A DNA stretch of 64,000 nt from Fonticula alba ATCC 38817 (taxonomy: Eukaryota > Protista > Nucleariida): NCBI GenBank assembly GCA_000388065.2, contig KB932209.1. The stretch is one strand, 5' to 3'. Positions 39,030 to 64,000 of the stretch are shown piece by piece. Within the stretch, counting starts at the first letter, position 1, and each line of letters opens with the position of its first letter. The notes beneath the pieces were generated by a model. The model was not told the origin of the DNA. It made no database searches and saw only the letters and a program-made list of their open reading frames with translations. Position numbers and translations under genes: made by a program.

Positions 39030-40019
39030 GGTCACCACGACCCCGGTGAGGATGCGGGTCCCCGCTCGGAGGCAGAGAGCATGCCACCCCCCTGCCCCCG
39101 CGCCCAACACCACACCCGTGGAGGACGGTCGGGCGTCCGGCTGCGCTGAACGCCCGGCCCCCGAAGCACACCCTGATATCTCGGCGCCCGCGAATGCCCG
39201 CCATCCGGCATGCTCCCCCCCCCCCCCCCCCCCCCCCCNNNNNNNNNNCCCCCCCCCCCCCCCCTCGCCCCCATATTGCCCCTCCTCCCCCCGTCGCCTG
39301 GGCTGGTGTTCGGACGCTGCGTGCCCCCGGATCGCGGGCCCTCAGGGCCGCATTTCTCCCCTTGCTACCCCTGTGTGTTGCGGGAGGACGTTTCAAACTC
39401 CTGGGAAGGATGTTCCCCCTCCGGACCCCCAGCAAGCCACCGGGCGCAGGCCACGCCGGGACCTCCTGCGTTGGACCCTGCACCACTCCACCCGGGGGCG
39501 CCCGATCTTGGCGCATGGCCCGACGCCGTGTTTTCCGGCCACAGAGGCCCGGCCCCGGGGCGTGCGACCGTGTTGCGAGCCGAAACAGCCCGACCCGGCC
39601 GAAGCGTTGGCATGTCGCTATGTGCCGAAAGGGTCTGGCCTCTCTCTCCGGGCACCACGCCGGCCCCGGCTCTCAGGGGGGGCGGATGGCGGAGTTGAAA
39701 AATACCTTGCACCGGGCGGCCACGGAGCGGGCTCGCTGGAACCAACATCCGCAGGCGACCCCGGCCCGAGGGGTGTCGTGGCGGGGGCCCGGCGCAGGCA
39801 GGCAGGCGGGGCCCGGACCTAAGGCGGGGAAAAGGCCGCCCCCTCCCGGCGCAGATGGCTGTCCACAGGCCAAATGCAATTCCCCTCCCTGCCCTAGTGG
39901 CCTGCACACTTTGTCCCCTCTCCCCCCCCCCCCCCCCCTCGCCGCTCTTGCCCGGGCTCGGCCCCACGCCCGCCCTTGCTTCTGCCTTGCCCCTCCAGCC
40001 ACCGGGGCCCGGGAAGGTT

Positions 40020-43000: not shown

Positions 43001-46000
43001 CGGGCCCAGGTCCATCCTGCTGAGGGTCAGCTGCCCGGAGGGGACGTACGGGCTCTACTGTGATCCCTGTGATGATGCGTGCCTCACATGCCGGGGCCCG
43101 GGGCCGGGGGACTGTAAAACATGCCGCCATCGGCTGCCCTCCGAGCCGGAGGTGTGCCGGGCGGCCTGCCCGGCCGGGCTGTATCCCGACCATGAGGGCA
43201 TGTGCATTTGCCATTCCAGCTGCAATGCCTGCCCCCCCGACAGCTTTGGCAATTACCTTTGCATCGAGTGTGTCACTGGCCATGTTCCGGATGTGAATGC
43301 CGGCGAGCCGGGCCGGTGCTTCGCGTGCGATGCATCCTGTGGCGAGTGCTCGCGGCCTGGCGATCCGAAAGCCTGCACCTCATGCCCACCCACCCGGTGG
43401 CTACTGGATGGGGCTTGCTATGAGCAGTGTCCCGAGGGGACGCGGCTCGATGTCGGGAATAATGTCTGCCAGCCATGCGGGCTCAATTGCCTTCTCTGCA
43501 GCATGGAGGGTGTTTGCGATGCATGCGTCGAGCGGCACTTCGCCGCTGGCGATGGGTCCTGCGCGGTGTGTGACGGATCCTGCGTCGACTGCACGGATGG
43601 CATTTCCTGCACGGCATGCCGGCCGGGGCTGGTGTTCCTCGGGACCGATGCGCAAGTGCCATCGCTTTGCGGGAGTTCCTGCCTGCCGGGCCAGTTCGTC
43701 GGTGCTGGCCGGTGCGCCGAGTGCGACGCCAGCTGCGAGTTGTGTGCCGGGAGCGCGGCCGCCTGCCAGGTGTGCGCCGATGGCTTCCGCTGGGCCGGCC
43801 GGCCGGCGGCCGGGGCCACCGGGACATGCGTGCCCTGCGCGTCGGGCTGTGCCTCCTGCACGGCAGACAAATGCCTGACCTGCGAGGCGGGCCTGTTCCT
43901 GGCATCGGACGGGACGTGTGTGAGCACGTGCCCGGCCGGGGCCTGGCCCAATGGGGAGTCCTGCCAGCCGTGCGACATCTCGTGTGCCACCTGCACCGGC
44001 GGCGGCGGGGCCGACCAGTGCACCGGCTGCGAGGAGGGCTTGGACTTCGTCGAGAGCGCCCCCGGCGTCGGGGCATGTGTTTCCGGCTGCGACGAAGGCC
44101 AGTACCGGGACCCGGACGCCCGCACCTGCCTGCCGTGCGACGCGGCCTGTGCCACATGCAACGGTCCGACCGACAAGGACTGCTGGCGCTGCCGAAAGGC
44201 GATCTTGCAAGATGGCGACTGCGTGCAGGCGTGTGCTGCCTCGTATGTGGCCGTGGCTGGGCGCTGCCTGCCGTGCCATGCTTCGTGCGCGCAATGCATG
44301 GGGGTCCGGTCGACGGAGTGTGTGCCGGCCTGCCCGAGCGAGCTGCTGGCCCTGCCGACCGGGGCGTCTCCCACGCGGTGTGTGCCGGCCTGCCCGGCGG
44401 GCTACCACACCACGGCGTCGGGGTGCTCGCCGTGCGGGTCCCATTGTGCCAGCTGCCCGGCCTCGGCGGCGTCCTGTGCCCAGTGCGAGCGCGGGTGGCT
44501 GCTGGCCAGCCCGGAGTGTGTGTCCTCCTGCCCGGGCGGCAGTCTGCCGCTGGGGAATGTGTGCGCCACCTGCCACGGGACGTGTGCCACATGCTACGGC
44601 CCGGGGGACAACAACTGCCTCTCCTGCAGCCCCGATGCTCCCTTCATGGTGGGCGGGCGGTGCCATGCCGCCTGCCCGGCCGGCACGCACGAGGTGCTGG
44701 GCGCCTGCCTGCCCTGCCACTCGACATGTGCGGCGTGCGAGGAATCCGGCGATGACCGGTGCACCGCGTGCTCGGGCGACCGGGCCCTGCTTGGGGGCGA
44801 GTGCCTGCTTGGCTGCCCTGCCGGGTTTTTTGCCGAGAACAACGTGTGCACCCAGTGCGGGCCCTCGTGCGCCACGTGTGACCGCCCGGGCAGCTGCACG
44901 GGCTGCGCCCCGGGTCGGCTACTCCAGCCGGATGGGCTGTGCGCCGTCGGCTGCCCGGCCGGGTGGACGGAGTGTGCCGCCTCGGCCGGGTGTGTCCAGT
45001 GCCCGGACCACTGCCGTGCGTGCCTCTCGCAGGGGCCCCCCTGCGAGGCCACCTGTACGGCCTGCGAGGCGGGGTATGTCCTGTCCTCGGGGCAGTGTGC
45101 CACGAGCTGCCCGGCCGGGGCCTTCCTCTCGCGGGAGTCGGGCACCTGCCAGCAGTGTGCGAGCGCCTGTCGGACTTGTGTCGAATCGGCGGACCGCTGC
45201 ACTGGCTGCGCCATGGGGGTGCTCCTGCCGGGGGAGGGCACCTGCGTGTCGGCCTGCCCGGGCGCCTCGGCGCCGGTGGATGGGGCGTGTCTCGGCTGCC
45301 CGGCCGGATGCGAGCAGTGTCGCGCGGGCCCGGGCCAGCCCGGATGCGAGCTCCAGCAGGATGGGCAGCTTGCCTGTCCCGAGGCCACTTCCTGCTCGCG
45401 CTGCATGGCGGGGCTGCTCCTGCAGGGGGACACCTGTGTGGCAGCATGTCGGAAGGACCATTACGCGGATGTGGCGGCCAATCCGCCGGCCTGCCTGCCC
45501 TGTCACAGTGGGTGTGTGAGCGGCTGCACCGGGCCGGAGCCGGCCGACTGCGACCAGCTCCCCCGGCCCACGGCGTCGCGTGTGGGCCTGGCCGTGGGTC
45601 TGTCGGTGGGGCTGCTGCTGCTGCTGGTCCTGCTGATCCTGGCGGTACTGTGCCTTGTGCGCCGGCACAACCGGCGGGCCATGCTGGCCAAGGACCTCGC
45701 CGCCCATGACGCGGATGCCACCATGCTGAACACCATCGTGGAGCTGGCCCTGCCCGGGGCCATTCTGGTGAGTGTGGACCTGGACTTCCGGCCGGTCAAT
45801 GAGCAGCTCGGTGCCGGGACCCAGGCATCGGTCTATGCGGCGCAGGCGGTGGGCACGGGGATCATGGCGCGCCTGGGCTGTCCGGATGTCGTGGCCGTGA
45901 AGAGGATGNNNNNNNNNNNNNNNNNNNNNNNNNNNNNNNNNNNNNNNNNNNNNNNNNNNNNNNNNNNNNNNNNNNNNNNNNNNNNNNNNNNNNNNNNNNN

Positions 46001-46968
46001 NNNNNNNNNNNNNNNNNNNNNNNNNNNNNNNNNNNNNNNNNNNNNNNNNNNNNNNNNNNNNNNNNNNNNNNNNNNNNNNNNNNNNNNNNNNNNNNNNNNN
46101 NNNNNNNNNNNNNNNNNNNNNNNNNNNNNNNNNNNNNNNNNNNNNNNNNNNNNNNNNNNNNNNNNNNNNNNNNNNNNNNNNNNNNNNNNNNNNNNNNNNN
46201 NNNNNNNNNNNNNNNNNNNNNNNNNNNNNNNNNNNNNNNNNNNNNNNNNNNNNNNNNNNNNNNNNNNNNNNNNNNNNNNNNNNNNNNNNNNNNNNNNNNN
46301 NNNNNNNNNNNNNNNNNNNNNNNNNNNNNNNNNNNNNNNNNNNNNNNNNNNNNNNNNNNNNNNNNNNNNNNNNNNNNNNNNNNNNNNNNNNNNNNNNNNN
46401 NNNNNNNNNNNNNNNNNNNNNNNNNNNNNNNNNNNNNNNNNNNNNNNNNNNNNNNNNNNNNNNNNNNNNNNNNNNNNNNNNNNNNNNNNNNNNNNNNNNN
46501 NNNNNNNNNNNNNNNNNNNNNNNNNNNNNNNNNNNNNNNNNNNNNNNNNNNNNGAGCGCCGACCGGTCGTCGGCCCTGGTGCACACGCTGCCCGAGCTGA
46601 ATGCCATGACGGTGCGGTACGCGGCGCCCGAGGTGATCGGCGCCTTCCAGCGTGGTGTCCCCCTGGAGCCGGAGCTCCTCTTCGCGGGGGACATTTACAG
46701 CGCGGCGGTCATGCTCAACGAGTGCCTGACCCGCGCGGCCGTGTGGCCTGGGAAGGATCTCCAGGGCATCGTGGCGGCTGTGATGGCCGGCGGGCGACCG
46801 GACATGTCGGCCCTTCCGGCTGCCGGGCCTTTTGCCGCGGCCGGAGACCTTATCCAGGCAGCTTGGCAGGATGACCCGGCGCGCCGGCCCTCGGCGGCGG
46901 CCTTGCGCCAACGGTGTGCCGGGCTGTTTGTGGCCGCCGGAGGTTTGGGCAGCGACTCGGGGCCGTGA
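40020..46968 (+). CDS. Receptor-like kinase 4 (paralog); join(40020..41346,41560..46968) with gap 45909..46553 in the kinase
   Basis: Signal peptide MAPLRPSWRRRSPAILVALSWLVLLFAGPARA; PEIRWGSFF; phase-1 intron GTATGT(41347)..CAG(41559); long furin-like stalk; TM VGLAVGLSVGLLLLLVLLILAVLCLV; GAGTQASV, VAVKRM. After the gap it reads SADRSSALVHTLPELNAMTVRYAAPE...DIYSAA...RRPS to the stop at 46968. Confidence 0.88.
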
Positions 46969-47174: not shown

Positions 47175-47247
47175 AGCCCACTGTGGGGCTCGAACCCACG
47201 ACCCTGGGATTAAGAGTCCCATGCTCTACCAACTGAGCTAAACAGGC
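47175..47247 (-). tRNA. tRNA-Lys-CTT: tRNA-Lys, anticodon CTT, intronless; Pol III T5 terminator at 47167..47163
   Basis: Reverse complement GCCTGTTTAGCTCAGTTGGTAGAGCATGGGACTCTTAATCCCAGGGTCGTGGGTTCGAGCCCCACAGTGGGCT folds as a 73-nt cloverleaf with perfect D, anticodon and T stems. Confidence 0.95.
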
Positions 47248-48384: not shown

Positions 48385-48458
48385 GGCCGCGTAGCTCAAT
48401 TGGATAGAGCACCTGACTACGGATCAGGAGGTTGTGTGTTCGAGCCGCATCGTGGTCA
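48385..48458 (+). tRNA. tRNA-Arg-ACG: tRNA-Arg, anticodon ACG, intronless; Pol III T6 terminator at 48461..48466
   Basis: GGCCGCGTAGCTCAATTGGATAGAGCACCTGACTACGGATCAGGAGGTTGTGTGTTCGAGCCGCATCGTGGTCA forms a cloverleaf with anticodon stem CCTGA/TCAGG and a TTCGA T-loop. Confidence 0.95.
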
Positions 48459-50389: not shown

Positions 50390-52633
50390 TCATTCCGCCT
50401 CGCAGGAGAGGCCATCCGAGCTGAGGGCGTAGCCCGCGGCACAGGACACGCAGTGGAGCGCACGCTCGGCCGGGTCGTGCGGGCTCTTGACAAAGCAGCT
50501 GAGGCAGTGCTCCGGGCAGGGCACGGCGAAGCGATCCTTCTGCGTCTGGTAGAAGAGCCCCCAGCCGGGCCGGGTAAGGGCGTCGGCGGTGCACCGGGCG
50601 GTCGGGACCACGTCGAAGGACTCGGCCGGGAGCTCCTTGACGCGAGGCACATTGTTGGGGCTGGCGGTGCACTGGAGGCAGCCGACGCCGAGGCCATTGG
50701 CGCAGGTGCCGCAGCCGCCGCCGCAAGGGAGGCACTGCTTGGAGTGCTTGTAGTAGCCCTCCGGGCAGGTGGTGAAGCACTCGCTGTCGCCAAAGAGCGC
50801 GTGGCCGAACTTGCAGGCAGTGCAATTGGTGGCGGTGGTGCATGTGGCGCAGCCCGAGTCGAGGCAGGGCTGGCACCGGCCGCCCGACAGGAAGTACCCC
50901 TCCGGGCACTCGGCGGCGCAGAATTGGCGAGCCCCCTTTTCGCGCGGTACCACCAAGTACATGCCGGGATGGCAGTGGGTGCAGTTGTTGGTGTACAGGT
51001 CGCAGGCCCGGCAGTTGGGGTTGCATGGGCGGCAGCCCTGCTGCGAGCCGGGCAAATCAAAGTCCCAAACGGAACCGCTCCCACAGGGGGTGTAGCACTC
51101 GTCGGCGCCCATGATGTAGGAGGGGTAGCAGGCGTAGCAGTAGAACTTGCTGGTGCACAGGGCACAGCCACTGTCGCAGGTGGGGCAGAAGCCCTTCCGG
51201 CCGAAGTGACCGCCGGGGCAGATCCCGCGGCAGACATTCTCATGGAGGTAGTCCCCGGACCAGCAGGTGAGACACAGCCCCGGGTCCTCGGAGGCACAGT
51301 GGGTGCAGTCCTGGACGGTGCATTTGGCACAGCTGCCAGTGAGCGAGTCTTTGGCGGTGCCGGCCGGGCAGGCATGGCCGCAAGACCCATCCGGGTGGGC
51401 GAAGAAGCCCCGCAGGCAGGAGAGGCACTTGGTGGGATCGGTCGGGTCGCATTGGCGGCAATTGGCCGGGCAGGCGAGGCAGACCCCGGTGCCGTTGTCG
51501 ACGGTGGTGGCCGGGCATTGGCGCTCGGCGTCCGGATCGCCATTGGCCCCGTAGCCGCGGATGCACGCGCCCACATGGACCGCCGGGCCGTGGGAGAAGG
51601 TCTTGGAGCTGTGGGCCAGGAGGAAGCGTCCGGCCGGGCAGCTGGTGCAGTCCTTGGGCCCGGGGCCGGCGCACTGGTCACACGCGTCGTGGCATTGGAA
51701 GCACACGCCGGGCCGGCTGCACTTGAGCAGGTGCGCGTGCTCCGGCCGGCCGGCGGTGTCGCTGGTGGAGGGGTCGGCATTGGCCATGGGCCAGTCGGCG
51801 CAGTGGAAGCCCTCCGGCACCAGGCGCTTGGGGATGCAGTGCGCGCCGCAGGCGATGTGGTCGGCCGCCGGGCAGGTGCCGACGCAGCGGCGGTTGGCAT
51901 CGAGCCAATGGCCCGGCTCGCACTGGGCGCAATCCTCATTCAGGTGGGGGTGGGCCAGGACCTGGCAGCCGGGCACCGGCTGGGGCTCGGCCCGGCAGAG
52001 GCCCTCGCCGGCGGCCTGGAACCGACACACGGCGCACTGCTGGTGATTGCCGGGGACCACATTCCAACAATGGTCCGGGCCGATTTGCACGAGGCTGGCG
52101 CCGGACACGGCCAGGTCCGGGAGCTCGTTGTCCAGGTAGGCATACCCGTCGACCAGGCGGTAGGCGCTGCTGTATTGCAGGCAGGTGACGTCGCCATCCT
52201 CGTACTTGGCGCGGATGCACCGGCGCAATTGCGGCACACAGTAGTCCGGGAGCTGGGACNNNNNNNNNNNNNNNNNNNNNNNNNNNNNNNNNNNNNNNNN
52301 NNNNNNNNNNNNNNNNNNNNNNNNNNNNNNNNNNNNNNNNNNNNNNNNNNNNNNNNNNNNNNNNNNNNNNNNNNNNNNNNNNNNNNNNNNNNNNNNNNNN
52401 NNNNNNNNNNNNNNNNNNNNNNNNNNNNNNNNNNNNNNNNNNNNNNNNNNNNNNNNNNNNNNNNNNNNNNNNNNNNNNNNNNNNNNNNNNNNNNNNNNNN
52501 NNNNNNNNNNNNNNNNNNNNNNNNNNNNNNNNNNNNNNNNNNNNNNNNNNNNNNNNNNNNNNNNNNNNNNNNNNNNNNNNNNNNNNNNNNNNNNNNNNNN
52601 NNNNNNNNNNNNNNNGAAAGAGCGCCGGGGGCA

Positions 52634-52664
<31 letters not shown>

Positions 52665-52890
52665 GCCCATAAGGAGGGTCCCTCTGGCCGAGGCTCGGCG
52701 CGGGGCGTGACGCGTGCGCGGCCGGCCGTCGGCGGGTGGGCACCCCGGGGGCCGGCAACGTACCGGGACCATTGCAGTGGACGCTGGGGATGCGCTGCTC
52801 GGCGCGGGCAAGGGCCAGGGCGGTGGCCAGGAAAAGCAGGAGGGCCGTGCGAGCACGCCATCCTGCGTGACCAGGAGCCCGGGGGAACAT
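50390..52890 (-). CDS. Secreted furin-like Cys-rich repeat protein with no TM or kinase; exon 1 52890..52764, then an intron running into gap 52260..52615, last exon <52259..50390
   Basis: Signal peptide MFPRAPGHAGWRARTALLLFLATALALARA and donor GTACGT at 52763. After the gap about 620 codons of CxxCxxxCxxC modules (e.g. CFQCHDACDQCAGPGPKDCTSCPAGRF) end CEAE-stop with no hydrophobic tail. Confidence 0.8.
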
Positions 52891-53095
52891 CGGTGCGCTG
52901 CTTGGTCTGGCGCCTGCTGCACGCGGTGTCGATGTGTCTCGGGGGCGTGGGGTGGATGGGGGTGTGCGGGTGGACTGGAAGGGGTGTTTCGTGGATGGGG
53001 GCCTTCTCGTCGACGGAGCTAGGACCGGGGAGGCAGACTGGAGGTCGAGAAGGGTGACGCAACTGCTTGGCACAGGATCGCTAGCACCGGCGGTC

Positions 53096-53103: not shown

Positions 53104-56100
53104 CCCTCCCCGCGCCGGGATCCCTCCCTGGCTGGGGGTCGAGCAATAACGATATCTCCCAAAGGCAGTTCGAGGGGCCGCTTCCTCGGAGTGCAAGTCC
53201 CTGCGATGCCAATGACATCCACACCGGCAGCCGGAGTGGTGGGCCGGCCCGGCGCGTGGCCCGGCCCGATTGCAGCCCTGCCCGATGGGGGACCGGGGAC
53301 CGGAGTCCTGCCCGTGCCGGTCATCCCCGCGAGTCGGGGGCGTCCCCGGGTGCCCCGGAGGGCGCGAGGCAGCCCGGATCCCGGGCCCCGAGCCAAGGGC
53401 CCATCGGCCGGGGCCATCCGGGACGGCTGGTCGGCCCAGCGCCGCCCGGCCGGGTCCATGTGTCCGGGGGAGGCCCCGACACCGAGGGGTCCGGATCTAA
53501 TTGGCACACCCGGCGGCCCTGGGTGCGATGGTTGTTGGTGGACCGGGTGTGATTGGGATCGAGGGGGGATATTAAGTCCAGGCTCGAGCCCGGCAGTCGC
53601 CCTCCGGCTGCCGGGCCTCGGGGAGCACCCTGCCCACCGGGGCCGGGCTGCCGCGTGCCTCGGCCCCGGTGCCGCCGGCAGGACGCCCGCCCGGTGGCGT
53701 GGGCTTCCCTCGCCCATTCGCCTCCGGACTGGCGAGGGGGCAGGCCCGTTCCGCGCATGCCCCCCTCTCCCCCCCCCTCTCTCCCCCCCCCCCCCTCCCT
53801 CTCTCTCTCTCTCTCTCTCGCTTTCTCTCCTTCNNNNNNNNNNNNNNNNNNNNNNNNNNNNNNNNNNNNNNATGAGCACAGCGCTGTCCTCACGGATCTA
53901 TCACCCCCCCCCCGGCATCGCACGCGGCGTGAGCCGGGTGGCCCCGAGGAGCATGGAGACAGGGGCGCGTCACCAGGCGCGAGCCGGGTCTTTCGCCAGG
54001 CGGACCCAAGTGAGCACGCCCTCCGCGCCCCCGGACGGGAAGGGCTATTGGCCCCCTGATCCGGCCTCCTGGTGGCCCCCTCCTTGGGCTCCCGCGGCAC
54101 GGTCTCCGAGGGGGGAGGAGGCGTTGCGCATACCCCACGATCGCACCCCTGGATGTGGGTGCCCGCCCCAAGGCACAGGAATCACGGCCAGCCAACCGGG
54201 TGCAACATACACACACACACATACATACACACACACATACGCATGCAGGGCCCAGGAGCAACCGGCCGACAGAAAATGCGCTCGCGTGGCCGGCCCGGGC
54301 CCGGCGTCCTTAGTTTGGTCCTCCCTCGGAGGAGGGCAGACACTCACTCGGGACGCGCTGCCAGAGCGCGCGTGCCACAGGTGACAGTCGGCCCGGGGGC
54401 CTCCGGCCTCCGGCCCCGGGCGGGGGGGGGGGGGGGGGGCAGCCCGGCACGGGGGTCGTGGGGGAGGACATATTAGCCGGCGTTCTTCACCATCAGANNN
54501 NNNNNNNCGTGGGGGAGGACATATTAGCCGGCGTTCTTCACCATCAGATCGACATAGCCCAAATGCTGGCAGCTGTGGGGTTGATGCGCCATCTGCCAGC
54601 GGGGTGTCAGGCTCACGGGCACGCGCCGGCCTGGCCGCGATGCTTTAATTGCGTGTCATACGAGCCCCCTTCTCGCAGGCGGGCGTGTGGTGCGGCCCGG
54701 TCTCCCCCGTTGGTCCTCTCTCTGTCTTGGCCTCTCGCTGCTGCTTCTTCTTTTTTTTTTTTTTCCGCCCCCGGTGCTTGAGCCCGCCGGCGCCGTGCCC
54801 TTGGGCATGTATATGTCTGCCAAGCTTGACAGGGATATGCTGCCCGGTGGCCGGGCCCTCGGCACCCGGGATGTGTATCGAGTGGGTGTCGTGTCTCTGT
54901 GAACCGGGGGCGCTTGGCGATGCACGCCTCTGGGCCGGGAGCCCCGGCCGGGCGCCTGGCCGAGGAGCGGGCACGTCGGACGAAGCCGCGTTCCCCTCTA
55001 TTCCAGAGTGCTGTCTTTTTATTTTAGATTGGACAACGCGCCCTCCCCGCCGGGGTGTGGGCTCCGAAGCTGCGCCCGGTGGTCATGCCTTTCCCGGACT
55101 GCCTCAGTCATGGGGCTCATGGCCGGGTGGGGCTCGCATCGCTGCATACCGTGACGGCCCAAGCGCCCCGGTGCCCCGGGCTGCCAAGCGTTCTTGGCCT
55201 CTGCGGCGGCATCCACGGCAGCGGTGCTGGGAGGCCCATACGCGCAAGGCACAGGGGCTCGTGCGCAGGTGTCGGGCCCGAGCGGGGGGGGGGGGGGCGT
55301 CCATTTTGGGGGGCCCGAGAGCCGGCCCGGAGGCCGGCAGCAGAGCACCCCTCCCCCCGACACACGGGGCGTGCCTCTCCTGAAGCACGTGGGTGGCCGC
55401 GCGTGCCGGCGGGTAGTTGGTCCGGCGAGGAAACCCCTTCGGCTATGGCGGGGATCGAGCGGGACACCGGCCCGGCCGCTCCGGCCCCTCGGTCTGGAGC
55501 GAGTGCCTGTGCTTGCTTCCGGACACCGGAGACACGAATCTCCGCCTTCGAAGAGGGCCACACGGGCGCCATGTCACGGAGGCGAGCTCGGGGCCCGGCA
55601 GCACCTCCGGCCGCATGCCCGGAGCAGGGCACTCGCCAAAGGGGAACAGTGCAGGGGGCGACCGCCGCTCCGGGAGACACCGCCTCCACACGGGGGGCGG
55701 ACGGGACACCAGGCGGAATGCATGCCCGGGGGCGCCATGTGCCCAAACACAGGAGGCGTCTCCGCCGGGTGCGGCACACTCATCCCGGGGGCAGACGGGC
55801 AGCAGAGACACCCGGCAAAGGGGACCCAGTGGGAGGGCGGGCGGGGGCTGACGTTCGGGGGCCCGGGGTGCCGGCCGGCCGGCCGGCCGGCCGCGGCTCC
55901 CTCCCGCCTTGGCGGGCCGGCTGTTGTCGGGCCCCGGTAGCCCCGCGCCCGAAGCCGCGCCCCATGATGTGGCATGTTTGGGCGCGGGGATATTTGTGCG
56001 TTGGGAGTGCCGGGGTCCGTGGGAACGCAAAGCCGGAGGGGCTAGGCCTTTGGCCGGAGTGCCCTCGGGGGGGTGGGGGGGGGGGCCTATTTGCCGGGCC

Positions 56101-56196
56101 GGCCCGGGGCCGGAGACGGGGCCGGCGCGGATGCATGCCTTGATTTTCCCCTCGCCCCTGCACATCCCGCGATCCCACTCCGCCCCCACAACTACC

Positions 56197-59100
56197 ATGG
56201 ATTGCCGCAGCACGGCCCCCCAATCGATGGCCGTGTCTCTCCGGGCCCCGCGAGCCCTCCGCCTGGCGGGGCGGGAGCTGCGCCTGCTGCCGGGTCCCGA
56301 TCGCCCCGACGAGCAGGGCTGGCCGGCGCAGTTGCTCCTGGCTCCGGGGGATTTCGCCGAACTGGCGGCCGGGTCCGAAGAGCCGGTCTTCGTGGCAGCC
56401 GGGAGCCACACCCTTTGGGCTCGGTATGGGCCACTGTGCCGGGGAGCGGTTTGGGGGGCTGGGTTTCCTCATCACCGCTCCGCTCTCTCTCTCTCTCTGT
56501 CTCCTTCCCTTTTTTGGGGTGGCCATCTAACACATTTGCTGCCGGACACAGGCCGGATTCCCTGGTGTCAGACGGCTGCCTTTTGGTTGGTCTGGCAGCC
56601 GAGTCTATTGATGTCCCGGCGACGGGCGGCGCGCCGGAGGCAAGACGCCTCGAGCCGGGCGACGTGCAGGTTGTCTACCTGGCCGTGTCGGCCGCTCGGC
56701 CGGTGGAGCTGCCCTACACGCTGCTGGTGGATGCGCTCCGGGAGCGGCCCCTGCCCGGGCGCTTGCACGTGGACCAGGTGCGCGATGGGGTCGGCACGAC
56801 GCTCTTCCGATCTGAGCCGGGCGACGTGCAGGTTGTCTACCTGGCCGTGTCGGCCGCTCGGCCGGTGGAGCTGCCCTACACGCTGCTGGTGGATGCGCTC
56901 CGGGAGCGGCCCCTGCCCGGGCGCTTGCACGTGGACCAGGTGCGCGATGGGGTCGGCCCCGGAACGTGACGTCGAGAAGGGCCGGGCAATGCAAGTGGTC
57001 TCTGACAGGCATGGGCAAGATCCTCGGCCTTGCGGTCGATGGAGTGGAGCTGGAGCTGCGTGTGGCCGAGCTTCAGGCGGAAAGCGGCACGCGCGTTGCC
57101 TTTGGGCTGGTCAGTGCATCGACCCGGGTGCTGGCCACCGCCGGGCCGGGGGTGGAGCTGCCCGGGGCGCCGGTAGATCGGAAGAGCACACGTGTCTCTG
57201 ACAGGCATGGGCAAGATCCTCGGCCTTGCGGTCGATGGAGTGGAGCTGGAGCTGCGTGTGGCCGAGCTTCAGGCGGAAAGCGGCACGCGCGTTGCCTTTG
57301 GGCTGGTCAGTGCATCGACCCGGGTGCTGGCCACCGCCGGGCCGGGGGTGGAGCTGCCCGGGGCGCCGGTGGTGGTGGCCCTCGCCGGGCCGGGCCGGGC
57401 CCCGGGGCAGCACTTTGTCCTGAGTGCCATGCACTTGTCGCCGGGCGAGCTGGACGTGCTTTTTGCCCCGGCCGGCGGGGCGTTGGCGCGAGCCCTCGGC
57501 ACCCGGCCTCCCGGCGGCCGGGCGTACGCCCGGTGTGGCCGGCGGGTGTTTGAGATTCGGTAGCGTCGTCTGTTGGATGTGTCCCGGTGCGGGGTGGCAT
57601 GCCTGTGGCTGACCGTACATCCGCCCCATGCGCGCCTGTGTATCCCCCCCGGGGGCCTCCCAAGCGTGTGCCCTCGCCCGGCGGTGGTCGGGGTCGATGT
57701 CCGGGCCAGCGAGAAGTTGCTGCGGTCGCTGGGGCCGCGATTGGACGGGCGCCCGGTGCCATTGGCCCTGTGTGACCCGCCGCCGGGGGTGGCGGTGGCC
57801 TGGCTCGAGACCGCCATGGACATCGCCCGGGTGGACCGGGCCCATGCGATCGCCCAATTGACCGGGGCCCCGCTGCGTGTGGGAGAGGTGCGTTCTGGGC
57901 GGGGGCGGGGGGGGGTCCCTCGCCGGGCGAGGGTGAGAGCGCGGCGCACGTGGCCATGGGGGGCTTTTTTTCCCGGCTAACATGCCCAGCAGGCGGTGCA
58001 TTTGACGAGTCCGCCCTTGGCGGCGCGCGTGGTCGGGCTCATGGATCGCGGGTTCACCATGCTCTCCAGCGGGCAAGCCGGGGTCTTCGACGCGAGCACG
58101 GTGCTGGCGGTGGAGTCGGCTCGCGGCAGGGCCGCCGGCCATCCCCACCGACTGGCGGTGGTGTCGGTCGGGCCGAGCATGGTCCTGCTGGACCTGGTGC
58201 CGGCGAGCTGGCTCGAGCACCGGGGGACGCTGCTGCTGTCGGAGGCGGCGCTGGCCCGACTGACGGGGGCTTCGGATGGGCAGGCCGTGCGGCTTGCAAG
58301 CCAGGGGGCCCTTTTCGATGTGCAGTGCGTGGAGCCCGTTCGCCATTGCCGCGCCGCATGCCTCCTTCTTCTGACCGCGAGTCGGGGTGCAGGGCCGGCG
58401 GCCGGATCGGCGCCTATGAGCTGGGCATGCACCCGGGGGACCTGGAGGCGCTGGCCGTGGGCCTGAGGCCTGTGGTCTTCTCCCGGGCCCCGGTGGTGCC
58501 GGTGGCCGAGAGTGTCGAGGTGTCCTTCGGTCCGGGCCCGGGGGGCCGGGCTCTGCCGTCGGTCGATCAGCTAACGCGGGACTTCCTGGCCGCACATGGC
58601 CGGGCCACCATGCGCGTGGATCGGGTGCGTCCTGTGGCCAGGGTGCGCCGGGAGGGCTGGGATGTTGGCAGCTGGATTGACTCGGTGTGCCGGGTGTAGG
58701 GTCTTGCCTTCCGGTCGCGGGAGGGCCCGGTGGTGGCCACGGTGCGGGCCGTTGCCTGGCCCGGGTCGGCGGGTGTCCATCGGCCGCTGGGCCTGCTGGG
58801 CGAGGGGACGAGCCTGCGCGTGGGCTGCCGGTCGCCGGGGCCCGATGGTCCCGCCGGCCCGGGGGCGGGCCGCCACGGCTGGGAGCCGTGGTTTTTGGTC
58901 GACTTCCCGTCAACCGCCGTGGGCGTGGGCCCGGGCGATGCGCCGATGTGCCTGGAGGTCCGGGCCACTTGTGGGCGCCCGGCTGGGAGTGCCGGCATCT
59001 GCCCGGCGACCTTCGGGCGGATGTGCGACCGGCTGCCGGGGAGCCGGGAGCTTTTCCTCCACTGGCATGGCCGGTTGCTGGTTTTGATGTGCGTCCATGG

Positions 59101-61193
59101 GTGCCCTGGCTCGGGGACACGGCCTGCGACCGGCTGCTGACTGTGCATTAGCCCGGATGCCGGGCTGTCCGGCGGGGAGATCGCGCTTGGCCGGGTGGAC
59201 ATCGAGCGGCACTTTGCCGGGCAGGCGCTCGTCAGGGCCATGGCCAGCAGGTCGGCCGCGCGCCCGTCGCAAGTTGATGTGCACCTCTCGCCAGGGCCCC
59301 GGCCATTGGAGTGTGTGCACCACGCGGACGCGGTCCGGGAGTTCCTCCGGCTGTTGGATTATTCCGTGATCTCGGTGGGCCAGGTATGCACGGGGGCGGC
59401 GTGGGCCGATTTCATCGGCTCCCCCCCCCCCCCCCCTGGACCGAGTTGCCGTCGGCTTTCCTCGGACCTGCATGGGATGCTGACTGTCTACCCCCCCCTC
59501 CGCGCTGCAGGAGATCGATCTGCCGGCCGGGGGCACAACCGTGCGCGCGCGGGTGGTCCGGCTGATGGACACCCAACTGCGGGCCTTGGAGTCCGGCTTC
59601 CTGTCCATGGACCACACGCCGGCCTTTGTGCATGTAAGCACGCCGCAGGGGGAGCCCTACGTGCTGCGTCCCCCGCGGTCGGTACTACTGCAGGTGCCGC
59701 GACTGGAGCTGGGGGTCCGCTTCCCGGTGGCCGAGAGGCCCGAGTATCTAACGGTGGAGGAGGATGACTTGCTGGTCTCGGAAAGGACTCTTCGCTCGCT
59801 GGAGGCCCATTTCCTGGAGCCGGAGCCGACCATCCTGCTCGGTGACAGGGTTCGAGTGGTGTGCGTTCCTCTTTGCGACAGCACGCGGTGAGGGGAGGGG
59901 CTCCGCCATTGTCTGGCTTTGTGTGTGTATTATTGTGTTTTATATATGCACTTGTGTTTTATGTCTGTACTTGTGCCTGCACTCGTGCCTGCATATGTGC
60001 CCGCACTCGTGCCCGCACTCGTGCCCGCACTTGCGCCCGCACTTGTGCGTGTCTGTGGACCAGACTCTGACGTGTGTATCGTGACTTCGGGGGCGCCCAT
60101 GCAGCGGATATGCTGGCGGCGGGCTCCGGCGCAATGAGGCACTGCCGGGCACGGGGCTGCTCCGGTATGCCGAGGATGTCTACCACCTGCCATATACCGA
60201 GCCACCGGAGCTCCTGGCCCTCACCTGTCGGGTCGAGTGGATCGGGGATCGTCCGCCCCCGCGGCTGCGGGGGATTGGGCAATTGGAGCGCCTGCTGCTG
60301 GAGGCCATCCCTTTGGTTCCTTCCTTGTGTTGGGTGCTTTTGCTTTTCGTGGGGGCTGTTGGCCGCGGTTGGTTGCAAACCCTGGCTTCCCCCCCCCCCC
60401 CCCCCGCCCCGCCCCCCTGCAGAGCTACTCCCTGGCGGGGAGCTGGCCGGAGCTGGTGTTCACACCGAGCAGGCTGACGAATGGCGAGCGCGCGTCCGTC
60501 GAGGCCGGGGCCGTGGTGCCGGGGCTGACGCGGATCTCCTTCGACATGGAGGCCGGCGGCCGGCTGGCCCTGGCGGAGGCCGACCCGCTGGCGGTGACCC
60601 TTCACTGCGGGCGGCGGCGGCTGCTGCTGCTGAGTGTCCACCTGGCGCCGGGCGTGCCGCCGCTATACCCGGGGCTGCACCTGCCGCGGGAGGTCTTCCA
60701 ATCGGTGGCCGAGTCGGCCGATGAGGGGCAGCCTGGGGGCTGTTTGTTCTTCCTGTGCCAGGGCCGGACGTTTGTCGCGCGGCTGGCCGACACGCACGAC
60801 CTGCCCGGGGTGGTGCGGCTGAGCGCGGGCTTTGGGCACTTCCTGCGGGGTGCGCCGGAGCCGCCGCCGCCGCGGGTGCGCCTGCGCACGCCGGTGTGGC
60901 TGAGCGCGGTGCATGTGCGCGTGGTGCCAGCCCGTGCGTCCAGTGGCCCGGTGGCTGTGGATCTAGCCCCGCGGGATTTGGTGGCCGGCCTGAGCGTGGC
61001 CTTCGCCGACATGAGCATGGCTCTGTTTGAGCGGCGCCCCTTCCGGGAGGTGGTCCTCGTGCCGGAGGTCCTCCTGGACGCCGAGCACCAGGAGGTGGCG
61101 TGCGGGCTCCTTCGCCGGGGACACACCCAGGTGCGGCTCTATGTGCGGGATGTGGACCTGCGACCGGGCAAGTGCCCGCTGAGAATTGAGTAG
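56197..61193 (+). CDS. ~11-exon, ~1200-aa protein of about six tandem NSF/CDC48-N-like modules with no AAA domain. Exons approx 56197-56423, 56552-56939, ~56996-57559, 57665-57887, 57993-58324, 58393-58624, 58700-59088, 59152-59383, 59511-59887, 60105-~60333, 60423-61193 (exons 2 and 3 contain artefactual duplications)
   Basis: Phase-consistent GT-AG introns: 56424..56551, 57560..57664, 57888..57992, 58325..58392, 58625..58699, 59089..59151, 59384..59510 and 59888..60104, several with CTAAC/CTGAC branch points. The exon 2/3 junction and the donor near 60315-60333 are uncertain. The domain call is by motif resemblance only. Confidence 0.68.
56796..56813. other. Illumina adapter fragment (ACGACGCTCTTCCGATCT) between two copies of a 144-nt duplication (56652..56795 / 56814..56957)
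   Basis: Exact match to the 3' end of the Illumina read-1 primer/adapter, sitting at the duplication junction. Confidence 0.95.
57175..57193. other. Illumina TruSeq adapter fragment (AGATCGGAAGAGCACACGT) between two copies of a 177-nt duplication (56998..57174 / 57194..57370)
   Basis: Exact match to the start of the TruSeq adapter, sitting at the duplication junction. Confidence 0.95.
59981..60048. repeat. Degenerate 12-bp minisatellite (GTGCCCGCACTC-like, ~5-6 units) inside an intron
   Basis: Directly visible within predicted intron 59888..60104. Confidence 0.8.
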
Positions 61194-61609
61194 GCGTCCG
61201 CGCATCGGCATGTCAATGGATGATGTTCTGTTTGTGTGCGCATGGGTGTGAGTGGGGGGGGGGCGGGAGCGGGGGAAGGGAGAGAAGGTGAGGGGGTTGC
61301 TCCAGTCCCTTTCCTTGCAGGAGGCATGCAAAGAAGGCTTCTCAAGCGTGTGTGTGTGTGTGTGTGCGCTCAATTGTGGCCGGTTATGGGGGGAGGCGAG
61401 ATGTGGAGGGCTTGCCTTTCGATGGTGCTGGCTGTGTGTGGTGGATCCGGGGCTGGGAGAGGGATGGCGCGAGCCCGGCTACGGTGGCAGGCTGTCGGCG
61501 GGGTGCGATGGCCCTCGTTCTGCCCGTGCTCGAATGCTTCCTGGCAGGCCGGAAGGCGTTCTTCGATGGGGGAGACACGGCCCCGAAGAGGGTGTTAGGG
61601 GGGGGGGGT

Positions 61610-61833
61610 GGCTATTCTTGGAGGGGATTTTTCCTTCGGCAAGTGGCCAGACGAGGAGATCGTCTCGAAGTCCGGCAGCCCGGTCCCGGCCCACTGGCGG
61701 CCGAGCTCGAAGGGTACCCGGGGCTATTCTTGGAGGGGATTTTTCCTTCGGCAAGTGGCCAGACGAGGAGATCGTCTCGAAGTCCGGCAGCCCGGTCCCG
61801 GCCCACTGGCGGCCGAGCTCGAAGGGTACCCGG
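61610..61833. repeat. Perfect 112-bp tandem duplication (61610..61721 / 61722..61833)
   Basis: Two adjacent identical copies starting GGCTATTCTTGGAGGGG; real or artefactual status unknown. Confidence 0.85.
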
Positions 61834-62094
61834 TAGGAGGGGGTACATCAAGAGCCGATGGTGCTCTGCTCGGCCATGTCCCCCCAAAGACGGAGGGCTG
61901 TGGGCAGGAGGGGCCAGTGTCAAAGGTCCTCGGCACGCAGATCACCAGGCCGTGCGAGTGGAGGCCCTCCAGCTCGGCCGAAGCCGGGGTCCCCATCCGA
62001 CGGGGCTTTTGTTCCTATCAGAATTCACATGTCCTTTCACGTGTGTATGTGTGTGTCTTCGTGAGGGTGCCCTTGCAGGCATCTGCGCGCCCGT

Positions 62095-62244
62095 CGGAGC
62101 CGGCGGGGAGGCGGAGGCGGCCGGGGAAAGGCCAGAAAGTGTCCATGCCCAAAGCCCGGGAGCTTATCCCGGAGCCGGCGGGGAGGCGGAGGCGGCCGGG
62201 GAAAGGCCAGAAAGTGTCCATGCCCAAAGCCCGGGAGCTTATCC
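62095..62244. repeat. Perfect 75-bp tandem duplication (62095..62169 / 62170..62244)
   Basis: Two adjacent identical copies starting CGGAGCCGGCGGGGAGG. Confidence 0.85.
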
Positions 62245-63885
62245 TCCCCAGCATGGTCCCCGATGGTCTCGGGCTTCTCCCTGCTTGCCCGCCGATGCCC
62301 GAAACCGATCTATGCACCAAGCGAGAGAGAGAGAGAGAGTGAACAATAGCGCCGGCTCCGGCTGGGGGTTCCGATCGGCGCCGGCAAGAGACAGAGCCCG
62401 TGCGCCAGGCGACTCACGGCCACGACCGGGGAAAGCCCGGAGGGGGGACTGCCGGGCGTCGGCACACCGGGAGCAATCCCAAGCCATGCCGACGCCGGTG
62501 CTCGGCCGCATGCCCAGGCGGCCAGGGGGGTGCTGTGCGGGGACATGCAGTCGAGCTCTCGAGGGCGGGCGCCACGCTGGCCGCCACGAGGCGCTGGGCG
62601 AACAGCCGGGCCTTTACTCCGGGTGACATGGATCCCTCGGGGCGCAACTAGCAACATCACACGGGGGATAGCCGCGAGGGGGCGGGGGGGGGGGGGGGGC
62701 GCGGTCGGCATCGCCCCAATACGACGCGATCGGGGCGGGAGAGAGGGCTCCCGAGCCGCTGTCCGGGCAGAGAGCCTCCCCCAAGGGGGTGTCCCTGGCC
62801 ACCACCCGCCGGGCAGCATGGATACTTCGGGGCGGCTTGGGGCCACGTTTCTTGGCTCTGCCCCTCGCATGTGGAAGCAGGCATCCCGACCGCGGCTCGG
62901 CCCGGCCGGACGACGGGGGCTGGATGTCTGGTCCCGGCGCCGGGATGGAGGCGGCATCACGGCCGGGCAGGTGTGGCCTCTGCTGACGCCCCAGGCTCAG
63001 TGTCGGCAGCCGCCACCGCCCCTTCCTTCTGGCCGGCACGCGGCGATTCTCCGCGACTCCATTAAATTGGGGGACCTCCCTCCGGCCGTGGGCAGCCGGG
63101 GCGTCGGCACCGAGGATGCAACTTCGGCCCCCCCCCCCGCTCCCCGGGTAAACCATCAGAAAATGGTGCATTTATATGCTCCACCGAGCGCGAGAGAGTG
63201 CCCTGGGCGCGCCTTGCGGTCCGGCGATCGAGAGGATGCCATTCGGCCGTGATCCGGGGGGGGGGGGGGCAGGACGGGGCCGGCGGCTTTGGGGCGCCTT
63301 CGCCGCTTGTCACCCCACCGAGGCGACACAGCTCCGGGCCGGGTCCATGAAGGGGGTCGGAGTCCACCCCGGTCCCTGGCTAGCTGGACGGCGGGGGGGA
63401 CGGGGCACGGGGGGCGGCGGAAATGCCGCTAGGTGGGGGGAGCAATAAATGGTGACTCTTTCGAAGCGTCTCATAATCCCAAATGTGGCCGGGCCAGGGG
63501 GAGGAGGGGGGACACTCGCTTCCCCAGAGGCGATGAGTCGACATGAGCCGGACCGGCCCAGCTGCGTGCGTATGTGTGCGTGTGTGCGTGTGTGAAGGTG
63601 AGTGGACTGGCTCCGGCTGGGCGGCGGCCGGGTTACCCAGGCGGCCGGGTTCCCCCGGGCGTGGATCTCCCCGTGTAGGGGCAATAAGCGTCTCCGGGAA
63701 TGTCATGGGCTCCTTTGGAGCCTACCAATATGCTAGCTGATTTCCGAGCTTGAGAGCTGCCCAGCGAGCCGGAGGACCGGCTATTCGTCGCTTCTGCGCG
63801 CGCCCGGCCCTGATGAGCGAGCGCCCTGTGCCAACATGACAACGAGCTAATTGGCTGGCCGGCCGGAGCCAGTCCACCCACCTTC

Positions 63886-63896
63886 TCACACACACA

Positions 63897-63946
<50 letters not shown>
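63886..63946. repeat. (CA)n microsatellite
   Basis: Directly visible, with one interruption. Confidence 0.9.
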
Positions 63947-63953
<7 letters not shown>

Positions 63954-64000
63954 TACGCACGCAGCGCCGGAGCCCAGGCCCTCCGGACTCCGGGTGCAAT

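What the first reader, a model, noticed from the sequence alone, without database searches (positions are those of the whole stretch)
56197..61193. Protein apparently built from six tandem NSF/p97-type N-domains with no ATPase
Seen: after splicing, a ~190-aa unit recurs six times. Each begins with a 'hLxPxxhxxL' type segment (LLLAPGDFAEL, MHLSPGELDVL, LLLSEAALARL, AGICPATFGRM, LLVSERTLRSL, LHLPREVFQSV). Each ends in G-h-h-x(3-4)-T-x-h (FGLVSASTRV ~57100, AGVFDASTVL 58077, LGLLGEGTSL 58787, SGFLSMDHT 59592, AGAVVPGLTRI 60504, CGLLRRGHTQV 61101). No Walker A or B motif is present. Knowledge (from memory): the NSF N-domain has ...EF...FSVGQQLVF...GLVVGNSQV, closely echoed by unit 4 REFLRLLDYSVISVGQEIDL...SGFLSMDHT. 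N-domains (double-psi barrel plus beta-clam) bind SNAPs or cofactors and are normally presented six at a time by a hexameric ATPase. Inference: one chain mimicking a hexamer's N-domain ring, acting as an adaptor, decoy or scaffold in membrane fusion or p97-type pathways. I know of no described protein like this.
Basis: partly seen in the sequence, partly recalled or inferred. Interest (0 to 1): 0.8.

Follow-up and report, generated by a model that had tools for sequence, protein, structure and literature searches.

The report
Chain of six NSF-type N-domains
This gene of the amoeba Fonticula alba encodes a roughly 1,180-residue protein made only of six copies of the two-lobed partner-binding domain that normally fronts NSF/Cdc48-type motor proteins, with no motor attached; I found no description of this layout, and its job is unknown.

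Summary
Once two Illumina-adapter duplications in the public assembly are removed, window 56197-61193 (+) is one spliced gene, H696_05299 of Fonticula alba, annotated as only 568 aa. It encodes about 1,178 aa with no Walker motifs.

- **Six repeats.** Units 1-5 each carry two introns at identical alignment columns and phases. Each unit's profile matches the other five at E 1.6e-5 to 4.6e-4, against 0.12-0.9 for 24 reversed or shuffled controls.
- **Limits.** Pfam and sequence searches against PDB find nothing. Only units 6, 4 and 2 have structural support; the others rest on homology.
- **Family.** At least eight collinear six-unit paralogs, found only in Fonticula.
- **Function.** Adaptor, decoy or hexamer mimic remain untested.

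The scan met two paralogs before (s1-065454, s1-065396). I class it as a new architecture of a known domain.

The parts
56197..61193 (+). Whole gene H696_05299, start codon to TAG stop. It has 11 exons once the two assembly duplications are removed and encodes about 1,178 aa.
   Evidence: The annotated 568-aa protein P0001 is contained exactly from residue 611.
56197..56423 (+). Exon 1 (N-lobe of unit 1). No RNA joint for intron 1 (56424-56551).
   Evidence: Canonical GT..AG. Conserved in two paralog loci by tblastn: L004 18127-18318 and L003 9598-9687.
56552..56939 (+). Exon 2, to be read as 56552-56651 plus 56814-56939. The stretch 56652-56813 is a duplicated copy plus adapter and is not real sequence.
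   Evidence: RNA joint 56651->56814.
56796..56813 (.). Illumina adapter (ACGACGCTCTTCCGATCT) inside the assembly, between two identical 144-nt copies.
57175..57193 (.). Illumina adapter (AGATCGGAAGAGCACACGT) inside the assembly, between two identical 177-nt copies (56998-57174 = 57194-57370).
   Evidence: RNA joint 56997->57194.
57216..57559 (+). Exon 3 (end of unit 1, start of unit 2).
   Evidence: RNA joint 56939|57216, GT..AG.
57665..57887 (+). Exon 4.
   Evidence: Donor and acceptor inferred for intron 57560-57664. RNA joint at 57887|57993.
57993..58324 (+). Exon 5.
   Evidence: RNA joints.
58393..58624 (+). Exon 6.
   Evidence: RNA joints.
58700..59088 (+). Exon 7.
   Evidence: RNA joints.
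59152..59383 (+). Exon 8.
   Evidence: RNA joints in four runs.
59511..59860 (+). Exon 9. The donor GTGCGT at 59861 is the annotated one.
   Evidence: RNA joint at 59383|59511. The donor is the same type as in five other introns and puts the intron at the common alignment column.
60105..60315 (+). Exon 10. The 3' boundary is uncertain.
   Evidence: Annotation and collinearity with paralogs. No RNA joint. RNA and assembly disagree at 60313-60376.
60423..61193 (+). Exon 11 (end of unit 5, all of unit 6, stop codon).
   Evidence: 100% match to P0001.
56197..57362 (+). Unit 1 (residues 1-200; coordinates include introns and the artefact copies).
57363..58145 (+). Unit 2 (residues 201-391).
58146..58885 (+). 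Unit 3 (residues 392-590).
   Evidence: Language-model features of the paralog's unit 3 point to CDC48_2/PEX-1N (a lead only).
58886..59675 (+). Unit 4 (residues 591-790).
59676..60584 (+). Unit 5 (residues 791-976), the most divergent unit.
   Evidence: and 77 (a lead only).
60585..61190 (+). Unit 6 (residues 977-1178), without introns. This is the unit modelled directly.
   Evidence: AF2 pLDDT 82.5, pTM 0.79. The NSF N-domain is the best match.

Best explanation
Window 56197-61193 (+) is an intact, transcribed and spliced gene of Fonticula alba. Its roughly 1,178-aa product is a string of six homologous ~190-aa units joined by short Pro/Gly-rich linkers.

Each unit has the two-lobed N-domain fold of NSF/Sec18-type AAA ATPases: a double-psi beta-barrel followed by a beta-clam/alpha-beta roll. 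There is no ATPase, signal peptide or other recognisable domain.

The array arose by tandem duplication of a three-exon cassette. This happened before the gene multiplied into at least eight collinear paralogs, found only in Fonticula. Each position has kept its own identity since: same-position units are 30-48% identical between paralogs, while different units within a protein are 9-24% identical.

Inferred, not shown: every characterised domain of this fold (NSF-N, p97-N, PEX1-N, the Ufd1 N-domain, the DEPDC5 N-terminal domain) is a non-catalytic protein-binding module. The most likely mode of action is therefore a cytosolic multivalent binding platform. Six differentiated N-domain sites on one flexible chain would bind several partners, or one repetitive partner, with avidity. 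Units 2 and 6 are the most conserved and may hold a common partner.
For: - **Gene model and transcription.** GT-AG joints on the + strand confirm six introns, and the adapter duplications are absent from RNA. The model contains the annotated protein exactly.
- **Repeat.** Ten introns fall two per unit in units 1-5. With the annotated exon-9 donor, they sit at alignment column 113 (phase 2) and column 215 (phase 0).
- **Profile comparison.** Leave-one-unit-out hhalign gives E 1.6e-5 to 4.6e-4 for all six units. Twenty-four reversed or shuffled controls give E 0.12-0.9. The best unit pairs reach E 1.5e-5 and 2.8e-5. Twenty-six units align in register.
- **Swiss-Prot.** All 30 best hits are NSF, Sec18, PEX1/6, Cdc48, VAT, DEPDC5 or Ufd1.
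- **Language-model features.** Units 6, 5 and 3 all point to CDC48_N, CDC48_2, PEX-1N and UFD1 clusters.
- **No ATPase.** No Walker motifs, and no Pfam domain in any paralog.
- **Family.**. Per-unit conservation.
Against: - No sequence-profile method links the units to any N-domain family. Pfam finds nothing at E<=10, and hmmsearch against PDB finds nothing.
- Direct fold evidence exists for unit 6 of this protein and for the C-lobes of units 2 and 4 of a paralog. The N-lobes of units 1-5 were modelled below pLDDT 50 and rest on homology alone.
- The alignment used to model unit 6 mixes all six units, so that model is not independent of the repeat hypothesis.
- Introns 1, 3, 9 and 10 have no RNA joint.
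- RNA over exons 10-11 is dominated by what looks like an antisense transcript.
- Nothing here bears on binding partners, location or function.
Confidence: 0.75

Rival explanations
1. NSF-crown mimic. The six N-domains on one chain imitate the six N-domains of an NSF hexamer. They bind alpha-SNAP/SNARE (20S-type) complexes without disassembling them, so the protein acts as a decoy, brake or tether in membrane fusion.
Against: There is no sequence similarity to NSF-N, so conservation of the SNAP-binding basic residues could not be assessed. The six units are strongly differentiated by position, unlike the six identical N-domains of a hexamer. The full-length model says nothing about a ring (pTM 0.26). 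Eight or more diverged paralogs are hard to reconcile with one conserved SNAP partner.
Confidence: 0.1
2. Ubiquitin or UBX-type reader. The units work like the Ufd1 N-domain or p97-N. The chain would then be a multivalent receptor for polyubiquitin or ubiquitin-like domains, possibly feeding or competing with Cdc48.
Against: These matches are weaker than those to NSF and DEPDC5. No binding motif could be checked.
Confidence: 0.1
3. Fast-evolving lineage-specific family tied to the neighbouring giant receptor kinases, for example as cytosolic adaptors of that signalling or recognition repertoire.
For: Giant furin-repeat receptor kinases lie within 10 kb of this gene and of two paralog loci. Both families are specific to Fonticula, lie in tandem arrays and have diverged.
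Against: Such receptors are extremely common in this genome: 208 of 1,554 scan notes concern them. Adjacency is therefore expected by chance. Locus L003 has none within 10 kb.
Confidence: 0.07
4. The resemblance to N-domains is convergent or a modelling bias. The units would be an unrelated beta-rich repeat of unknown fold.
For: No sequence-profile link exists. TM-scores are about 0.5. The model comes from a shallow, mixed alignment. An earlier follow-up on a paralog could not show the fold (s1-065396).
Against: Four libraries and two aligners give the same family first. Both lobes match in the right order over the whole domain. The unit-4 C-lobe fits NSF at rmsd 1.9 Å over 97 residues. My unit-6 model superposes on the AlphaFold DB entry that Foldseek ranked first (568 aa, 96% identity, recognised as the window's own) at TM 0.91.
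Confidence: 0.08

Closest known systems
N-terminal domain of NSF/Sec18 (PDB 1qcs, 1qdn, 1cr5)
   Different: NSF has one N-domain per chain, fused to the D1 and D2 ATPase rings, and six are brought together by hexamerisation. Here six diverged copies sit on one chain with no ATPase. Sequence identity is 9-14% with no profile-level similarity, and SNAP binding is untested.
DEPDC5/Iml1 N-terminal domain (GATOR1/SEA complex; PDB 7t3a, 9o5a)
   Different: DEPDC5 has a single copy at the N-terminus of a multidomain GAP-complex subunit. It is conserved across eukaryotes, is not repeated and is not lineage-specific.
Ufd1 N-domain (PDB 2yuj, 5b6c)
   Same: An ATPase-free protein carrying one N-domain-fold module that binds ubiquitin. 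It is the precedent for this fold working away from an ATPase chain.
Pex1/Pex6 tandem N1-N2 domains (PDB 1wlf, 8u0x, 8u0v)
   Different: Two copies rather than six, always followed by D1 and D2 ATPase domains.
Other ATPase-free proteins with an N-domain fold in AlphaFold DB (fusions to cytochrome b5, a desaturase, CAP-Gly) and stand-alone giant-virus proteins carrying CDC48_N/CDC48_2
   Same: They show that the fold circulates as an independent module.
   Different: Each aligned through a single N-domain-sized stretch. Their full domain content was not examined.

Membership tests
NSF/Cdc48-type N-domain fold (double-psi barrel + beta-clam; Pfam CDC48_N/CDC48_2, PEX-1N, UFD1_N) | N-terminal lobe is a double-psi beta-barrel (two beta-beta-alpha-beta halves). 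| tested here: met
NSF/Cdc48-type N-domain fold (double-psi barrel + beta-clam; Pfam CDC48_N/CDC48_2, PEX-1N, UFD1_N) | C-terminal lobe is a beta-clam/alpha-beta roll directly following the barrel. | tested here: met
NSF/Cdc48-type N-domain fold (double-psi barrel + beta-clam; Pfam CDC48_N/CDC48_2, PEX-1N, UFD1_N) | Whole-domain structural match to solved N-domains, standing above unrelated folds. | tested here: met
NSF/Cdc48-type N-domain fold (double-psi barrel + beta-clam; Pfam CDC48_N/CDC48_2, PEX-1N, UFD1_N) | Sequence-profile match to the Pfam families or to solved N-domains. | tested here: not met
   No Pfam family at E<=10 for ten exon translations or six paralogs. Profiles of units 6 and 4 find no N-domain in PDB sequences. 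Language-model features point to these families at scores of 0.80-0.90, which are leads only.
NSF / p97 / PEX1 type II AAA ATPases (membership of the protein family, not just the fold) | N-domain followed by D1 and D2 AAA+ modules with Walker A and B motifs. | tested here: not met
   No Walker A or hhhhDE motif in the protein, and no in-frame one within 54000-64000. TAG stop at 61191-61193. All paralogs end at the same point and have no Pfam domain.
NSF / p97 / PEX1 type II AAA ATPases (membership of the protein family, not just the fold) | Binding of alpha-SNAP, UBX/VIM/SHP cofactors or ubiquitin through the N-domain. | not testable with these tools
   No residue-level structural alignment or complex prediction was available, and there are no experiments.
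Internal tandem repeat of one ancestral unit | Units are homologous to each other beyond compositional bias. | tested here: met
   Leave-one-out hhalign gives E 1.6e-5 to 4.6e-4, against 0.12-0.9 in 24 controls. Intron positions and phases are identical in units 1-5. BLAST-level similarity is absent.
Pex1/Pex6-type tandem N-domains | Two N-domain modules (N1, N2) preceding AAA rings. | tested here: not met
   There are six modules and no AAA ring.

The most novel reading that the evidence does not exclude
A single polypeptide reproduces the six-N-domain crown of an NSF hexamer and engages SNAP-SNARE (or analogous AAA-adaptor) complexes without any motor. That would be a new class of endogenous, ATP-independent regulator or decoy of AAA-ATPase pathways, diversified into at least eight paralogs in an amoeba that evolved aggregative multicellularity independently.
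Probability: 0.1. Interest if true: 0.85.

Novelty: new variant of a known kind. Interest (0 to 1): 0.6.

Why it matters
N-domains are the substrate- and adaptor-recognition modules of NSF, p97/Cdc48 and Pex1/6. Their multivalency is normally produced by hexamerisation of the ATPase. A conserved, expressed family that hard-wires six differentiated N-domains into one motor-less chain would be a new way of using this ancient module.

- It offers a natural reagent for asking what N-domains can do without ATP hydrolysis: avidity, sequestration or scaffolding.
- It shows that Pfam-negative orphan families in under-studied protists can hide known folds in new architectures.
- It also flags adapter contamination and truncated or split gene models in the public Fonticula assembly.

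Tried and rejected
- **Self-BLAST** of the spliced protein found no internal hit at E<=10.
- **MAFFT of the six units alone** gave an out-of-register alignment. Adding the paralogs' units fixed it.
- **Pfam** on ten exon translations and six paralogs found nothing at E<=10.
- **hmmsearch** of unit-6 and unit-4 profiles against PDB sequences gave only chance hits.
- **Word-indexed homolog search** with the family alignment returned only the query itself.
- **Full-length AF2** of the paralog P0006 had mean pLDDT 45.8 and pTM 0.26. It is usable only for the better-modelled C-lobes and says nothing about how the units are arranged.
- **ESM Atlas structure search** for unit 5 relies on a poor Atlas model (pTM 0.30) and gave meaningless hits.
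- **Link to neighbouring receptor kinases.** I considered it and set it aside, because these receptors are ubiquitous in the genome.
- **My first donor for intron 9** (59888) was replaced by the annotated GTGCGT donor at 59861, which restores the intron periodicity.
- **Literature.** Five searches found no description of the genes or of a tandem N-domain chain.
Full report
**What the sequence is.** The window is very GC-rich eukaryotic DNA. A search of 1.84 billion representative proteins with the last exon returned a 100% match to the 568-aa hypothetical protein H696_05299 of Fonticula alba. It also returned five further Fonticula proteins and nothing from any other organism.

**Why the annotation is short.** The annotated protein covers only the last 2.7 units because the public assembly carries two Illumina adapter fragments, at 56796-56813 and 57175-57193. 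Each lies between two identical copies of 144 and 177 nt. One RNA contig skips exactly these stretches (joints 56651->56814 and 56997->57194), so they are assembly artefacts.

**Gene model.** With the duplicates removed, the ATG at 56197 opens an 11-exon gene ending at the TAG at 61191-61193.
- RNA contigs from four runs (two samples of one study) give GT-AG joints on the + strand for introns 56940-57215 (80 nt after de-duplication), 57888-57992, 58325-58392, 58625-58699, 59089-59151 and 59384-59510.
- Introns 1, 3, 9 and 10 are inferred from canonical sites, from the annotation and from paralog collinearity.
- The final model (1,178 aa, pI 6.8) contains the annotated protein exactly from residue 611.
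- Exon 1 has no RNA joint but is conserved in two paralog loci.
- There is no Walker A or Walker B-like motif in the protein, and none in frame anywhere in 54000-64000.

The units are too diverged for simple methods, though. Self-BLAST finds nothing, and MAFFT of the six units alone does not align them. Three independent lines establish the repeat.
- **Intron periodicity.** Units 1-5 each contain two introns. In an alignment of the units made from protein sequence alone, the first intron falls at column 113 in phase 2, and the second at column 215 in phase 0, in all five units. For unit 5 this holds with the annotated GTGCGT donor at 59861. Unit 6 has no introns. The exons between the two introns measure 211-232 nt.
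- **Profile comparison.** I cut the family alignment into units and compared each unit's profile with a profile of the other five. This gave E 1.6e-5 to 4.6e-4 (scores 29-38.5), aligned in register over 77-136 positions. Six reversed and eighteen column-shuffled controls gave E 0.12-0.9 (scores 8-16). The best single pairs are units 5-6 (E 1.5e-5) and units 2-4 (E 2.8e-5).
- **Joint alignment.** When 26 units from the paralogs are aligned together, all six positions fall in register.

**What fold are the units?** Sequence methods say nothing. No Pfam family is found at E<=10 for ten exon translations or six paralogs, and unit profiles find no N-domain among PDB sequences. Structure prediction does give an answer.
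- **Unit 6 model.** Unit 6 of the window's own protein, modelled with the 26-unit alignment, reached mean pLDDT 82.5 and pTM 0.79. After an N-terminal strand it has the beta-beta-alpha-beta twice pattern of a double-psi barrel, followed by beta-alpha-beta5.
- **Foldseek on PDB.** Thirty-four of the best 35 matches are NSF N-domains; the other is PEX1-N (1wlf). The best is E 3.6e-7, and 1qcs aligns over 203 columns at TM 0.47-0.48. DEPDC5 and Sec18 fill most of the rest of the top 50.
- **Swiss-Prot models.** All 30 best hits are NSF, Sec18, PEX1/6, Cdc48, VAT, SAV, DEPDC5/Iml1 or Ufd1.
- **AlphaFold DB.** The entry Foldseek ranked first (568 aa, 96% identity, recognised as the window's own) superposes on my model at TM 0.91.
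- **Language-model features.** Units 6, 5 and 3 all point to CDC48_N, CDC48_2, PEX-1N and UFD1 clusters at scores of 0.80-0.90. These are leads only.

**The family.**
- tblastn of the family against four fetched paralog loci shows further copies in tandem pairs: L002 14973-19750 next to H696_05766, L003 2789-7234 next to H696_04153, and L004 18127-23166 next to H696_06122.
- The copy in L004 is annotated as two fragments, one of them H696_06124.
- Together with H696_06118 and this gene, that makes at least eight genes, all collinear over the six units.
- Identity between paralogs at the same position is 48% for unit 2, 44% for unit 6, 38% for unit 4, 37% for unit 3, 34% for unit 1 and 30% for unit 5. 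Different units within a protein are 9-24% identical.
- So the six-unit array predates the gene duplications, and each position has been kept distinct.

**How it probably works.** No signal peptide, transmembrane segment or catalytic motif is evident, and every characterised domain of this fold is a non-catalytic binding module. I therefore read the protein as a cytosolic multivalent binding platform whose six differentiated sites give avidity or bring partners together. This is inference only. It is untested and sits uneasily with strong positional differentiation and eight diverged paralogs; I give it about 0.1. A ubiquitin/UBX-reader role modelled on Ufd1 also gets about 0.1. Giant furin-repeat receptor kinases flank this gene and two paralog loci, but they are so common in this genome (208 of 1,554 scan notes) that I treat the adjacency as chance.

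**Comparison and novelty.** ATPase-free proteins with one N-domain are known: Ufd1, DEPDC5/Iml1, and cytochrome b5 or desaturase fusions seen in AFDB. Tandem pairs of N-domains occur in Pex1/Pex6. Five literature searches, including the locus tags, found no description of a chain of six with no other domain. I class it as a new variant (architecture) of a known kind.

Noticed in passing
window 56796-56813 and 57175-57193 (with duplicated copies 56652-56795/56814-56957 and 56998-57174/57194-57370): Illumina adapter sequence is embedded in the public Fonticula alba assembly (GCA_000388065.2). Each adapter is flanked by an exact duplication. This breaks the reading frame and explains why H696_05299 is annotated as only 568 aa. 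An RNA contig skips both.
   Followed up: yes
window 59897-61227 and 61228-61415, minus strand: RNA word depth is about five times higher over 59897-61227 than over the rest of the gene, and the contigs there are unspliced across introns 9 and 10. The same contigs skip 61228-61415, whose ends are CT..GC on the + strand. On the minus strand that is a GC-AG intron (AAG|GCAAGC ... AAACAG|). Together this suggests a more abundant antisense transcript overlapping exons 10-11.
   Followed up: partly
window 60313-60376 and 59196: RNA contigs disagree with the assembly. In intron 10, next to a poly-C run, the window has T at many places where the RNA has C or G. At 59196 all four runs read G where the window has T. 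That changes Val to Gly, giving 'LGRGD', and Gly is also what paralogs H696_06122 and H696_06118 have there. The cause is probably assembly error or strain difference.
   Followed up: partly
window 61610-61833 and 62095-62244: Two perfect tandem duplications (2 x 112 nt and 2 x 75 nt) lie downstream of the gene. They may be further assembly artefacts of the same kind, but no adapter is present.
   Followed up: partly
L002 14973-19750; L003 2789-7234 and 9598-10498; L004 18127-23166: Paralogs lie in tandem pairs, and several public gene models are truncated or split. H696_06124 (409 aa) and the 481-aa gene before it are one six-unit gene. H696_04153 lacks its first exons. H696_06118 skips most of unit 3.
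   Followed up: partly
window 39855-46874 (+), 50390-53062 (-); L001 15934-24151 (-); L002 23689-24519 (+): Giant furin-repeat receptor kinases flank this gene and two paralog loci. They are so frequent in this genome that I treat the adjacency as probably chance, but I did not test it genome-wide.
   Followed up: partly
window 47175-47247 (-) and 48385-48458 (+): Two tRNA genes lie between the receptor-kinase genes (Rfam tRNA, 66 and 58 bits).
   Followed up: no
UniRef name of H696_06122 (P0002): UniRef labels this paralog 'Cleavage/polyadenylation specificity factor A subunit C-terminal domain-containing protein'. No Pfam family, CPSF_A included, is found at E<=10, so the name looks spurious.
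   Followed up: partly
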